Shown here: positions 5,994 through 14,512 of the stretch, piece by piece
Numbering within the stretch: the first letter of the stretch is position 1
Layout: each line of letters starts with the position of its first letter
NCBI RefSeq assembly: GCF_006345805.1
Contig: NC_043012.1
Span: forward strand, 34,844,001-34,908,000
Length of the DNA: 64,000 nucleotides
Direction of reading: 5' to 3'
Source of the DNA: Octopus sinensis
Lineage: Eukaryota
Position numbers and translations under genes: made by a program
Notes under the pieces: generated by a model
The model's input: the letters and a program-made list of their open reading frames with translations, nothing else
Database searches by the model: none
What the model was told of the DNA's origin: nothing

Positions 5994-7050
5994 GCCCTTG
6001 AGAGAAGTAGTGTAAATATATGTGACGTCAATAACAATACTTGATAACGCTGAACTGATTGTCGGTCTAAGATGTAAGGAGACACGTTCAGAGTAAATAA
6101 GGTGTAATAATTGTGTGGGAGGTGCAAACAGCATGAAAGTGTTTGAGTGGGAATAGTAACGAGGTAGTAACAAGTGAATGCGTGGACATTTGTATGTATA
6201 GGGGGTTAGAGGGAAGCACCAGTTATTGGTACAAGGGTGTGACCGAATGGGAAAGTGATTGTTGTTCAGGACAAATCCAGGAAAAGGGACATCCGTGATA
6301 TCATACGAGACAGTAACAGTGAAATCAAGATGGAAATGGCCCGGAGATTTTCAAGTGACGGGCGAAAGGTTTGAGTGTTTCGATGCAATTTTGTTGGACG
6401 TCCGACAAATGCTCCCTATAACCATTGTTTTACTTTCAAGTAAGGATGTGATTCTATAGTTGTAGATGATTCAGTTTCCTTATCCGAGTAGGGATGATAG
6501 CATTCCAAGCTGGAATTCAACGGATTTTTCGATTATGTAATCGCTTTCCATGTGACTGTTACCTAAAGAGACAGATCTCGTTTACGAAGTCACGATAAGG
6601 AGTTTACCACGTCGCTACAAAACCACTGTTGGTGTCCACTCTTTCAATGCCCATGGAAAGTCTACTTGCGAAACATAATCATCACAAATGATGTTAGCTT
6701 TGATATAGATGAGAAAATACCTTGCTAGGACCAACAATTTCTTTTTGTACATATAGCAGGACAACTTGAGAAATATCAGTTTGATAAAATTGACTCGGTA
6801 CGAGGCCAAATATGTGCGAGAAGAGAAGTATATATCATTAAACTGACTTCACATAGTAAGTGACTAATTCTGTTTTGTCATGTCTTAGATGAATGCAAAA
6901 CCAAAATTTTATCATTTCGCAAGTTGAACTCAAGGTAAAAAAAGGAAATTCTTAATGTTATTTTTGAAAATCTAGTGGTTCCGTCAACTTGATTGAAATA
7001 TAAGAGTGTTGTTTCGTTAATTTAATTTCCATTGACTTTGAAGTTGCTGT

Positions 7051-7420
7051 TTGTTTGTTGAGCGAACGGTCTTCGTCCCAGAGCTCGCAAGATGGGAGAA
7101 GTCCGAAACGTGGTCCTTTGCTATTCGTAAGATCTGCAGAAGAGAAAGCAGGTCAACCCCCGACACCGAGAGCATCGACAGATGGATGAATGCGCATCTA
7201 GGCTCAGCGGTTGCGTAGGAAGTCGGAGACAAGAAACACGAAGAGAGAGTGAGAGAAAGTTGGAGCGAAAGAGTACAACAGGTGTCATCACCACCTGAGC
7301 CACATTGAGCTTTAGGTGTTTTCGCTCAATAAACACACACAACGCCCGGTCTGGGAATCGAAACCGCGATCCTCCGACCGCAAGTTCGCTGCCCTAACCA
7401 CTGGGCCATTGCACCTCCAC
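7051..7420 (-). mobile_element. tRNA-derived SINE family B, full-length
   Basis: Head GGAGGTGCAATGGCCCAGTGGTTAGGGC...GGTTTCGATTCCC with A/B-box-like motifs; 12-bp TSD TGAAGTTGCTGT at 7039-7050 and 7421-7432. Confidence 0.9.
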
Positions 7421-12742: not shown

Positions 12743-12945
12743 CTCTTTACTGTTTTACTTGTTTCATTTGACTGCGGCCATGCTGGAGCACCGCCTTTAA
12801 TCGAGCAAATCGATCCCGGGACTTATTTTTTGTAAGCCCAGTAGTTATTCTATCGGTCTCTTTTGCCGAACCGCTAAGTGACGGGGACATAAACACACCA
12901 GCATCGGTTGTCAAGCGATGTTGGGGGGACAAACACAGACATACA
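12741..12945 (-). mobile_element. SINE family E, 3' half
   Basis: Homologous to 19586-19760 and 27473-27790. Confidence 0.82.
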
Positions 12946-13310
12946 AACATACACGTACACACACATATATATATACATATAAATATATATACATATATAT
13001 ATACATGTATATACACACATATATATACATATATACATGCATATATATATATACACACACACACATATATATACACACTTACATACATATATATATGCAT
13101 ATATATATATATATATAGTAATACTAAGTAATTAAGGGTTTAGCAACGATTTGCCTCACCACACACCGAATTTAGAAATAGCAGTCAAAGAGTTATAGCT
13201 ATTCTTTCTACTAAAAGGGAGATCTCAGTAAAACCGCAGCACTTGAAAGGCAAACACAGACAGGCAAGAGAGAAGGAAATGACGGCAATCTATCATACAA
13301 TTTTAAGTCA

Positions 13311-13401
13311 CCTACGGACGTACGTTTCGAAATTAAGTTTTAGGAAAGCATAAGAATTAGATAATTATGACTTACCCAACTTCTTTTCTCATCAGCGTAG
13401 G
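13311..13401 (-). ncRNA. Type I hammerhead ribozyme, copy 1
   Basis: Minus strand: CCUACG-CUGAUGA-[GAAA...UUUC, 60-nt stem II]-GAAA-CGUACG-UC-CGUAGG. Complete core, stem I of 6 bp, GUC triplet at 13319-13317. Confidence 0.85.
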
Positions 13402-13893
13402 ACACTACAATTATGAATAATTATATATTAAATTTCGAGATACTAGAAGGCATCATCTCAACTCAGTATCAGAGCGAGCTAAAACCGTTACCAGTATCAC
13501 CAAATTCAAAATGTGAATGAAAGTTTGTGTCACCAACCCCTTCCCACCAGCGTGTAGCCAAGACAAGATGTTGCGGTCATTTACTGGGATGAAATATGGT
13601 TATCAGTACTAATATAGGGTGAAATTAATTAATTTGGAATAATCATTAATTTCACCAAGTAGATTTCGGCATGTAAAAGCCTCATTCGAGGAAAGTTTAA
13701 GTAATACAAAGTAATTAAGGGTTTAGCAACGATTTGCCTCACCACACACCGAATTTAGAAATAGCAGTCAAAGAGTTATAGCTATTCTTTCTACTAAAAG
13801 GGAGATCTCAGTAAAACCGCAGCACTTGAAAGGCAAACACAGACAGGCAAGAGAGAAGGAAATGACGGCAATCTATCATACAATTTTAAGTCA

Positions 13894-13984
13894 CCTACGG
13901 ACGTACGTTTCGAAATTAAGTTTTAGGAAAGCATAAGAATTAGATAATTATGACTTACCCAACTTCTTTTCTCATCAGCGTAGG
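13894..13984 (-). ncRNA. Type I hammerhead ribozyme, copy 2
   Basis: Identical to copy 1, offset by 583 bp; predicted cleavage between 13900 and 13899. Confidence 0.85.
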
Positions 13985-14146
13985 ACACTACAATTATGAA
14001 TAATTGTATATTAAATTTCGAGATACTAGAAGGCATCATCTCAACTCAGTATCAGAGCGAGCTAAAACCGTTATATATATATACACATATATATACATAC
14101 ATATCTATATAGAAAGATATAAAAATATACATATACACACACACAC

Positions 14147-14189
<43 letters not shown>

Positions 14190-14199
14190 TCTCTAACTC

Positions 14200-14512
14200 C
14201 GCCGGTTACGACGACGAGGGTCCCAGCTGATACGATCAACGGAACAGCTTGCTCGTGAAATTAACGTGCAAATGGCTGAGCATTCCACAGACACGTGTAC
14301 CCTTAACGTAGTTCTCGGGGATAATCAGCGTGACACAGAGAGTGACAAGGCTGACCCTTTGAAATACAAGTACAACTCATTTTTGCCAGCTGAGTGGACT
14401 GGAGCAACGTGAAATAAAGTGTCTTGCTCAAGGACACAACGCGCCGCCGGGAATCGAACTCACAACCTTACGATCATGAGCCGAATGCCCTAACCACTAA
14501 GCCACGCGCCTT
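14200..14512 (-). mobile_element. tRNA-derived SINE family D
   Basis: Head GGCGCGTGGCTTAGTGGTTAGGGC...GAGTTCGATTCCC, core GTGTCCTTGAGCAAGACACTT; second copy at 29035-29346. Confidence 0.85.

What the first reader, a model, noticed from the sequence alone, without database searches (positions are those of the whole stretch)
13117..14073. Retrozyme-like element: paired hammerhead ribozymes defining a 583-nt self-excising RNA unit
Seen: two 374-bp direct repeats (2 mismatches) around a 209-bp core, inserted in (TA)n, with no ORF. Each repeat holds a complete minus-strand hammerhead (stem I CCUACG/CGUAGG, CUGAUGA, stem II, GAAA, stem III, GUC). Established: plant retrozymes have this repeat-unique-repeat layout with one hammerhead per repeat; metazoan retrozymes and Penelope-like pseudo-LTRs carry type I hammerheads in tandem and yield circular RNAs. 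Inference: cleavage after 13900 and after 13317 releases an exact 583-nt monomer that could circularise. The 1.6-mer genomic copy is what reverse transcription around such a circle would leave. This may be an undescribed cephalopod retrozyme family.
Basis: partly seen in the sequence, partly recalled or inferred. Interest (0 to 1): 0.92.

Follow-up and report, generated by a model that had tools for sequence, protein, structure and literature searches.

The report
Octopus hammerhead retrozyme, Penelope-style insertion
This is one young copy of a non-coding 583-base mobile repeat whose RNA carries a well-formed self-cutting hammerhead motif; it belongs to the known class of animal "retrozymes", and its insertion scars point to Penelope-like retrotransposon enzymes, but cutting, transcription and RNA circles were not shown.

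Summary
Window 13117-14073 is a 1.64-mer of a 583-nt unit. Its two 374-nt overlaps differ at 2 positions, it sits inside (TA)n, and it has no ORF. Each unit junction carries a complete type I hammerhead on the minus strand.

Rfam's hammerhead models miss it, probably because helix II is 60 nt long. The fold is supported by covariation across four sequence families and by compensatory series within this clade.

The family is dispersed. The genome holds 464 exact cleavage-junction 21-mers and 228 fully intact ribozymes. The wider long-helix-II design gives 6,801 matches against 10 for the control.

Insertions have variable 5' ends. Their 3' ends fall at four internal positions abutting (TA)n, and never at the cleavage site. 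Inverted neighbours are always 5'-to-5'. These are Penelope-type scars, and they imply a template longer than one unit, either circular or multimeric. Intact Neptune-like Penelope elements that also end on (TA)n are present but share no sequence with the unit.

The plant-like "LTR" reading is wrong, because the repeats are only rolling overlap. Transcription, cleavage and circles remain unshown, since the public runs were contigs only.

Verdict: a new member of a known kind. Other agents of this scan reported sister families (349-505 nt) in the same genome, but not this 583-nt family.

The parts
13117..14073 (-). Whole insertion, 957 nt. Read on the minus (ribozyme-sense) strand it is unit positions s410-583 (14073-13900), then s1-583 (13899-13317), then s1-200 (13316-13117).
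   Evidence: L001 is the window region
13317..13899 (-). One full 583-nt unit. This is the predicted self-excised monomer, with 5'-OH at 13899 and C17 at 13317.
   Evidence: geometry of the two hammerhead sites
13889..13989 (-). Upstream hammerhead. Helix I 5' strand is 13984-13979 (outer pairs to 13989). CUGAUGA is 13978-13972. Helix II is 13971-13912. GAAA plus helix III plus GUC is 13911-13900. The cut is at 13900|13899. Helix I 3' strand is 13899-13894 (outer pairs to 13889).
13306..13406 (-). Downstream hammerhead, identical in sequence. The cut is at 13317|13316.
13117..13490 (.). Direct repeat copy 1 (374 nt). It is overlap of more than one unit length, not an LTR.
13700..14073 (.). Direct repeat copy 2 (374 nt, 2 mismatches to copy 1).
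12940..13116 (.). (TA)n/(CA)n microsatellite abutting the element's 3' end (sense), which is at s200 = 13117.
14074..14190 (.). (TA)n/(CA)n microsatellite abutting the element's 5' end (sense), which is at s410 = 14073. The junction shares TA.
13618..13657 (-). Strong 40-nt hairpin (s243-282) just upstream of the alternative 3' ends s299 and s306. It may be a recognition feature; this is inference only.

Best explanation
The stretch is one young insertion of a non-autonomous, non-coding retroelement of the metazoan non-LTR retrozyme class, with a 583-nt unit. The proposed life cycle runs as follows. The minus strand is transcribed (inferred). A type I hammerhead at each unit junction cuts after GUC, giving a 583-nt monomer. 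Helix I holds the monomer's two ends together, so a host RNA ligase can close it into a circle (inferred from the motif and from published retrozymes). A Penelope-like reverse transcriptase/GIY-YIG endonuclease nicks a (TA)n microsatellite. It then primes cDNA synthesis at one of a few internal UA-ending sites of the RNA (s196, s299, s306, s176). It copies across at least one intact unit junction and stops at a variable point. In this copy that left 1.64 units. Often the second target strand primes as well, leaving a 5'-to-5' inverted partner. Shown here: the motif, the family, the insertion anatomy and the covariation. Inferred: transcription, catalysis, circularity and the identity of the mobilising enzyme.
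For: Motif: every conserved hammerhead position is present, and helices I, II and III have type I topology. The competent fold is only 3.2 kcal/mol above the MFE. Helices I and II also form in the MFE of the whole 583-nt RNA, which folds much better than shuffles on the ribozyme strand (z -5.8) than on the other strand (z -3.0).

Covariation: families A, B, C and D keep the same architecture with different helix I and II sequences. Within the A clade, helix II shows compensatory series at position 2 (A-U/G-C), position 3 (A-U, G-U, G-C), position 8 (A-U/G-C) and position 11 (U-A, U-G, C-G). The 8-nt helix III sequence stays self-complementary in every family (GUAC, GCGC, AUAU, AAUU).

Family: there are 2,643 first-look candidates at 94-99% identity on many chromosomes, 464 exact junction 21-mers and 228 fully intact ribozymes. 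The long-helix-II pattern gives 6,801 matches against 10 for the control.

Insertion anatomy in ribozyme sense: 5' ends are variable. 3' ends fall at s196, s299, s306 or s176, and all abut (TA)n. No 3' end lies at the cleavage site. All 11 inverted neighbours are 5'-to-5'. Units differ by 1.9% within insertions and 3.3% between them.

Candidate mobiliser: intact 781-aa RT plus GIY-YIG ORFs carry a CX2-5CxxC linker, their copies are 97.9% alike, and they end on (TA)n. These traits match what PMC8557442 describes for Penelope-like elements. The class is described in PMC7229834.
Against: No RNA evidence. All runs found were Logan contigs with only a guessed RNA label, and their depth profile fits the genomic gradient of 5'-truncated copies.

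Rfam Hammerhead_1 and its relatives do not match, even at E<=10.

The unit shares no sequence with the Penelope loci sampled.

Within-family conservation of the ribozyme is only weakly better than the rest of the unit: 1 of 95 sites has a shared variant, against 25 of 488 elsewhere.

The palindrome symmetry test is not significant (9 against 3).

No 5' end lies at the cleavage site, so cleaved templates left no footprint.

Genomic data cannot separate a circular template from an uncleaved multimeric one.
Confidence: 0.78

Rival explanations
1. Same retroelement, but no circle. The template is a long, uncleaved multimeric or read-through transcript of an existing genomic tandem. The hammerhead is inactive or slow, a passenger inherited from a Penelope pLTR, and plays no part in propagation.
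For: All long copies cross the junction uncut, and no 5' or 3' end lies at the cleavage site. Helix III has only 2 bp as a monomer. There is no RNA evidence. Craig et al. note that Penelope-like elements can thrive without hammerheads.
Against: Compensatory changes in helices I and II, and self-complementary helix III in several active lineages, argue that selection acts on the fold. Units within one insertion are more alike than units between insertions. Published animal retrozymes of this layout do form circles (PMC7229834).
Confidence: 0.17
2. A local tandem duplication or small satellite in a microsatellite, with a chance hammerhead-like motif.
For: It lies inside simple repeats, and there are only 1.64 units at this locus.
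Against: There are hundreds to thousands of dispersed copies with the same unit, defined 3' ends and inverted partners. The motif is kept with covariation in sister families.
Confidence: 0.01
3. A plant-type LTR retrozyme, in which the two 374-bp repeats are LTRs flanking a unique core with a primer-binding site and polypurine tract, mobilised by a Gypsy-type element.
For: The layout at this one locus is repeat-unique-repeat with one hammerhead per repeat.
Against: The overlap length differs from copy to copy, and there are up to 3.2 tandem units. The hammerhead is type I, not type III. There is no fixed 4-bp TSD, the target is (TA)n, and inverted 5'-truncated partners occur.
Confidence: 0.01
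4. A SINE-like element moved by a LINE.
For: It is non-coding, with a defined 3' end and variable 5' truncation.
Against: There is no poly(A) or LINE-type tail and no tRNA or 5S head. Units are tandem, the target is (TA)n, and every inverted partner is 5'-to-5'. tRNAs were not sought with ARAGORN.
Confidence: 0.03

Closest known systems
Metazoan non-LTR retrozymes (Cervera and de la Pena 2020, PMC7229834; coral, mussel, axolotl)
   Same: Non-coding and A+U-rich (36% G+C here). Dispersed short tandems, from dimers to multimers, with one type I hammerhead per unit. Helix III is 2 bp capped by a tetraloop, as in invertebrate examples. The RNA is highly self-paired.
   Different: The unit is 583 nt, against the usual 170-400 nt. 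Helix II is 60 nt, against about 14 nt, so Rfam and standard descriptors miss it. The host is a cephalopod. RNA circles were not shown here.
Penelope-like elements and their pLTRs (Craig et al. 2021, PMC8557442; preprint 10.64898/2026.07.22.740005)
   Same: Partial tandems, an adjacent inverted 5'-truncated copy, a (TA)n target, and a hammerhead in the repeated part.
   Different: No RT/EN ORF. No detectable sequence similarity to the Neptune-like Penelope copies sampled in this genome.
Newt/axolotl satellite hammerheads (HHR_Amex1) and the ASBVd double hammerhead
   Same: Weak helix III with a palindromic loop that could pair between two copies. Here the self-duplex is 8 bp at -9.8 kcal/mol.
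   Different: Helix III here has 2 bp, not 1, so monomer activity is plausible. A need for the dimer form was not tested.
Plant LTR retrozymes (PMC4918200)
   Same: A hammerhead-delimited RNA of about 600 nt, with a circRNA intermediate proposed.
   Different: Those have type III hammerheads, true LTRs, PBS/PPT, 4-bp TSDs and high G+C. None of these is present here.

Membership tests
Hammerhead ribozyme, type I | Conserved core: C3 U4 G5 A6 N7 G8 A9, G12 A13 A14, the A15.1-U16.1 pair, and C17 (an H) at the cleavage site | tested here: met
   CUGAUGA ... GAA-A ... U-C is read directly on the minus strand at both junctions.
Hammerhead ribozyme, type I | Three helices around the core, with helix I open and helices II and III closed, plus the G10.1-C11.1 pair | tested here: met
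   Helix I is 6 bp, then a 2x2 internal loop, then 3 bp. Helix II is 4 bp, then a 2x2 loop, then a long hairpin. Helix III is A-U and C-G capped by GUAC.
Hammerhead ribozyme, type I | Helices supported by covariation | tested here: met
   Four families have different helix I and II sequences. Compensatory series occur at helix II positions 2, 3, 8 and 11 within the A clade. The counts were made by eye or script, not with a formal covariation statistic.
Hammerhead ribozyme, type I | Match to the curated Rfam models (RF00163 and relatives) | tested here: not met
   No hit at the gathering score or at E<=10. RF00163 does find seven other short-helix-II hammerheads in this genome. The 60-nt helix II is the likely reason for the miss; this is inference.
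Hammerhead ribozyme, type I | Site-specific self-cleavage | not testable with these tools
   Needs an in vitro transcription and cleavage assay.
Metazoan non-LTR retrozyme | Non-coding short tandem repeats, dispersed in the genome, with one type I hammerhead per unit and low G+C | tested here: met
   (G+C 0.36).
Metazoan non-LTR retrozyme | Expressed as linear and circular RNA of unit length | tested here: inconclusive
   Only Logan contigs with a guessed RNA label were available, giving no ends, no strand and no proof of transcription.
Metazoan non-LTR retrozyme | Co-occurs with autonomous Penelope-like elements | tested here: met
   There are 5,029 GIY-YIG candidates. Intact 775-883-aa RT plus GIY-YIG ORFs are present.
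Non-autonomous derivative of a specific Penelope pLTR | Sequence similarity to the terminal region of an autonomous Penelope-like element | tested here: not met
   blastn of the unit against 26 Penelope loci gave nothing significant. Only a small sample of the genome's Penelope copies was tested.
Plant LTR retrozyme | True LTRs of fixed length carrying type III hammerheads, plus PBS/PPT | tested here: not met
   The overlap varies between copies and the hammerhead is type I.

The most novel reading that the evidence does not exclude
The octopus genome holds a large superfamily of hammerheads with a 50-65-nt helix II (about 6,800 motifs, at least four families) that standard ribozyme models cannot see. 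Their insertion anatomy is direct genomic evidence for one mechanism. A Neptune-like Penelope enzyme would start reverse transcription inside an endless (circular) ribozyme RNA, at a few preferred UA sites paired to nicked (TA)n, and would roll around the circle. The evidence is that 3' ends fall only at a few internal UA-ending sites abutting (TA)n, never at the cleavage site, and always after crossing an intact junction.
Probability: 0.35. Interest if true: 0.6.

Novelty: new member of a known kind. Interest (0 to 1): 0.42.

Why it matters
Animal retrozymes are recent discoveries, and how they are copied back into DNA is still a matter of inference. This family gives an unusually clean picture of the insertion step: a (TA)n target, a few preferred internal start sites, no ends at the ribozyme site, and 5'-to-5' twin copies. 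It sits beside intact Neptune-like Penelope elements, so the partnership could be tested directly. It also shows that ribozyme censuses based on Rfam or short-helix descriptors undercount hammerheads in cephalopods. If the RNAs circularise as predicted, octopus tissues should contain abundant ~0.5-0.6-kb ribozyme circRNAs. That is relevant to a lineage already noted for unusual RNA biology.

Tried and rejected
1. Rfam at the gathering score and at E<=10 on the region gave no hammerhead hit, only chance snoRNA and miRNA matches.

2. RNA evidence: the single run search returned only contig-level runs with a guessed RNA label. Laying four of them showed the family in four studies and a permuted 582-nt contig in a second organism, but no ends, strand or proof of transcription. 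The depth profile matches the genomic copy gradient.

3. Sequence link to Penelope elements: none was found in 26 loci. No hammerhead was found in the 781-aa element's 3' region by Rfam or by regex.

4. RNA editing or strand-asymmetric substitutions before reverse transcription: not supported (A>G at 29 of 160 sites, T>C at 28 of 212, p=0.23).

5. Symmetry test for selection on the helix III palindrome: 9 compatible against 3 incompatible transitions, not significant.

6. Footprint of cleaved templates (5' ends at s1): none. The three apparent cases start at s574-581 or continue into an older unit.

7. Within-family depletion of variants in the ribozyme: only a weak trend.

8. MAFFT misaligned the proximal helix II bases, so pairs were tabulated from a structure-anchored parse instead of the count of structure pairs.

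The diverged A-clade copies were therefore read from the pattern listings, and their helix I could not be examined.

Full report
OBSERVATION. Window 13117-13490 and 13700-14073 are 374-nt direct repeats with two mismatches (13125 T/A, 13423 A/G). Their starts are 583 nt apart, around a 209-nt unique core. Impure (TA)n/(CA)n microsatellite lies on both sides. No ORF of 40 aa or more lies inside the element.

On the minus strand each repeat reads CCUACG-CUGAUGA-G...C-GAA-A-C-GUAC-G-U-C followed by CGUAGG. C17 is the complement of 13317 and of 13900, so two cuts would free minus strand 13899 to 13317. The 16-nt core word occurs twice in the window against 0.01 expected.

I number the unit s1-s583 on the ribozyme strand. 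s1 is the C of CGUAGG and s583 is C17. The copy is then s410-583, s1-583, s1-200.

IS THE HAMMERHEAD REAL? Rfam gives no hammerhead hit at the gathering score or at E<=10. The same Rfam model does find seven ordinary short-helix-II hammerheads elsewhere in this genome.

Read directly, however, the motif has every conserved position:
- C3-A9, G12-A14, A15.1-U16.1, C17 and G10.1-C11.1 are all present.
- The topology is type I.
- Helix I is 6 bp, then a U.U/G.G internal loop, then 3 bp.
- Helix II is 4 bp, then a 2x2 purine loop, then a long imperfect hairpin (60 nt in all).
- Helix III is A-U and C-G capped by GUAC.

The competent fold is 3.2 kcal/mol above the MFE of the 106-nt motif. Helices I and II also form in the MFE of the whole 583-nt RNA, both linear and circular. 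The most likely reason for the Rfam miss is the 60-nt helix II set against a 45-position model. This is inference.

COVARIATION. Two similar motifs turned up by accident in unrelated loci. A genome-wide pattern, CTGANGAG-N40-65-CGAAAC-N4-GTC, then gave 3,427 + 3,374 matches against 5 + 5 for the reversed control. The matches fall into several sequence families.

Four families are present in loci I hold:
- A, this one.
- B, at L062:9830-9930 on the minus strand.
- C, at L058:9115-9212.
- D, at L028:609-708 on the minus strand.

All four keep the same architecture with different sequences:
- Helix I is 5-7 bp, then a small internal loop, then 3-7 bp.
- Helix II is 4-6 proximal pairs, then a small internal loop, then a hairpin.
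- Helix III is A-C-NNNN-G-U.

Helix II inserts fold better than shuffles in each family (z -1.6 to -3.5).

Within the A clade (341 matches, control 0), helix II shows four compensatory series:
- Position 2: A-U or G-C.
- Position 3: A-U, G-U (L015), G-C (L028 and at least seven more loci).
- Position 8: A-U or G-C.
- Position 11: U-A, U-G, C-G.

The AA/AA (or AG/AA) internal loop four pairs above the core stays unpaired throughout.

The eight helix III bases are a perfect palindrome in every family consensus: ACGUACGU, ACGCGCGU, ACAUAUGU and ACAAUUGU. The common variants (AUGU, GUAU, GCGU, GUGC) keep self-pairing through G.U. The self-duplex is worth -6 to -13 kcal/mol. This fits the double-hammerhead mode known from newt and axolotl repeats (PMC7229834). 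A 2-bp helix III with a tetraloop is also the form that paper calls typical of efficient invertebrate ribozymes.

Two weaker tests added little:
- Shared variants are rarer in the ribozyme (1 of 95 sites) than elsewhere (25 of 488) among 28 units.
- A symmetry test on the palindrome gave 9 wobble-compatible against 3 incompatible transitions around 464 exact junctions, which is not significant.

THE FAMILY. The unit has 2,643 first-look candidates. The 40 that were scored gave 151 pieces at 94-99% identity on many chromosomes and scaffolds, as 1.2- to 3.9-mers of 583 nt. Exact 21-nt junctions number 464. Ribozymes intact through both helix I strands number 228, against 0 for the control. Contigs of the family occur in runs of four studies. 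One is a circularly permuted 582-nt contig in a second, coded organism.

INSERTION ANATOMY. Among 37 same-strand blocks in 26 independent loci, read in ribozyme sense, the 5' end varies widely, from s13 to s557. The 3' end falls at s196 (commonest, range 194-202), s299, s306 or s176. Every 3' end abuts (TA)n, and the element's last bases are ..UAU..AUA or ..CUA.

The 3' end is never at the cleavage site (s583). No 5' end is at s1. Every long copy crosses at least one intact junction.

Eleven of eleven inverted neighbours are 5'-to-5'. Their junction overlaps or gaps range from -6 to +13 nt, and their arms are 0-2.3% apart. Units differ by 1.9% within an insertion and 3.3% between insertions. 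The window's two overlaps differ by 0.5%, so it is among the youngest copies.

A defined 3' end with variable 5' truncation on the ribozyme strand is independent evidence that the RNA intermediate has ribozyme polarity. The ribozyme strand also folds far better than shuffles (z -5.8), while the opposite strand does less well (z -3.0).

Partial tandems, an adjacent inverted 5'-truncated copy and (TA)n targets are the hallmarks of Penelope-like elements in Craig et al. 2021 (PMC8557442).

CANDIDATE MOBILISER. The genome has 5,029 GIY-YIG candidates, many with open frames of about 781 aa. Six that I fetched encode RVT_1 plus a C-terminal GIY-YIG. They carry a CX2-5CxxC linker, CGRPNCGIC. The literature ties this Neptune/Nematis-type feature tentatively to (TA)n targeting. 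Two copies are 97.9% identical over 4 kb, and the element ends directly on (TA)n. No sequence similarity to the 583-nt unit was found, so the partnership is plausible but unproven.

MECHANISM.
- Shown: a complete, covariation-supported type I hammerhead at each unit junction; a dispersed young family; Penelope-type insertion scars; and templates longer than one unit.
- Inferred: minus-strand transcription; self-cleavage to a 583-nt monomer whose ends are held together by helices I and III; ligation by a host tRNA-type ligase, as published for other retrozymes; priming of reverse transcription on nicked (TA)n at a few internal UA sites; and rolling or read-through copying for 0.2-3.9 units.
- Not resolved: a circular template cannot be told from an uncleaved multimeric one with genomic data.
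- Not explained: the 3' ends use only s176-306, although a longer UA run near s470-483 is never used. A hairpin at s243-282 may be a recognition feature.

COMPARISON AND NOVELTY. The element meets the structural definition of metazoan non-LTR retrozymes (PMC7229834). It differs in unit size (583 nt against 170-400 nt), in its very long helix II, and in its host. It is not a plant-type LTR retrozyme. I found no description of cephalopod retrozymes in the searchable literature. A giant-squid genome paper only counts 235 Rfam hammerhead_1 hits. A 2026 preprint derives animal retrozymes from Penelope pLTRs, mostly in vertebrates.

Other agents of this scan have already reported sister families (349-505 nt units) in this same genome with the same reading. 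None covers the 583-nt family and none has RNA evidence. Those notes call the host an octopus. The assembly size (2.72 Gb, 13,516 contigs) fits my recollection of an Octopus assembly, but that is unverified.

It is a new member of a known kind, with catalysis, transcription and circles still to be tested.

Noticed in passing
L036/L037 (G000:C16:25146363-25146408 and 25146794-25146839, minus strand): Two Rfam-positive canonical short-helix-II type I hammerheads lie 431 nt apart. This looks like another retrozyme-like tandem of a different family.
   Followed up: partly
L058:8264-9368: Family C: a 535-nt unit with a long-helix-II hammerhead (CUGACGA, AAUU loop). It is present as tandem plus inverted arms 99% alike, inside (TA)n.
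   Followed up: partly
L062:9830-9930 (minus strand) and L028:609-708 (minus strand): Families B and D: the most abundant long-helix-II hammerheads (AUAU loop). In the list they often occur as 5'-to-5' inverted pairs 200-1400 nt apart.
   Followed up: partly
L058:3621-7530 (also L059, L061, L063): A Neptune-like Penelope element with an intact 781-aa ORF. Its 3' region (about 6740-7060) holds five spaced copies of TGATGACGTC, a CRE/ATF-like word. No hammerhead was detected in it.
   Followed up: partly
L062:9511 (+ strand): A short-helix-II hammerhead with a palindromic UCGA loop, on the strand opposite a 775-aa Penelope ORF.
   Followed up: no
window 14190-14300; flanks of L017 and L018: SINE-like sequence (GGTCCCAGCTGATACGATCAACGG...) next to the microsatellite. 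It is probably an abundant host repeat.
   Followed up: no
G000:C1:4162365/4162952 and C3:38541446/38542034: Family A tandems with 586-588-nt spacing, meaning subfamilies with slightly longer units.
   Followed up: no
window 13618-13657 (minus strand s243-282): A strong 40-nt A+U-rich hairpin inside the unit. Rfam gave chance miRNA-like hits there. It lies just upstream of the alternative 3' ends s299 and s306.
   Followed up: partly
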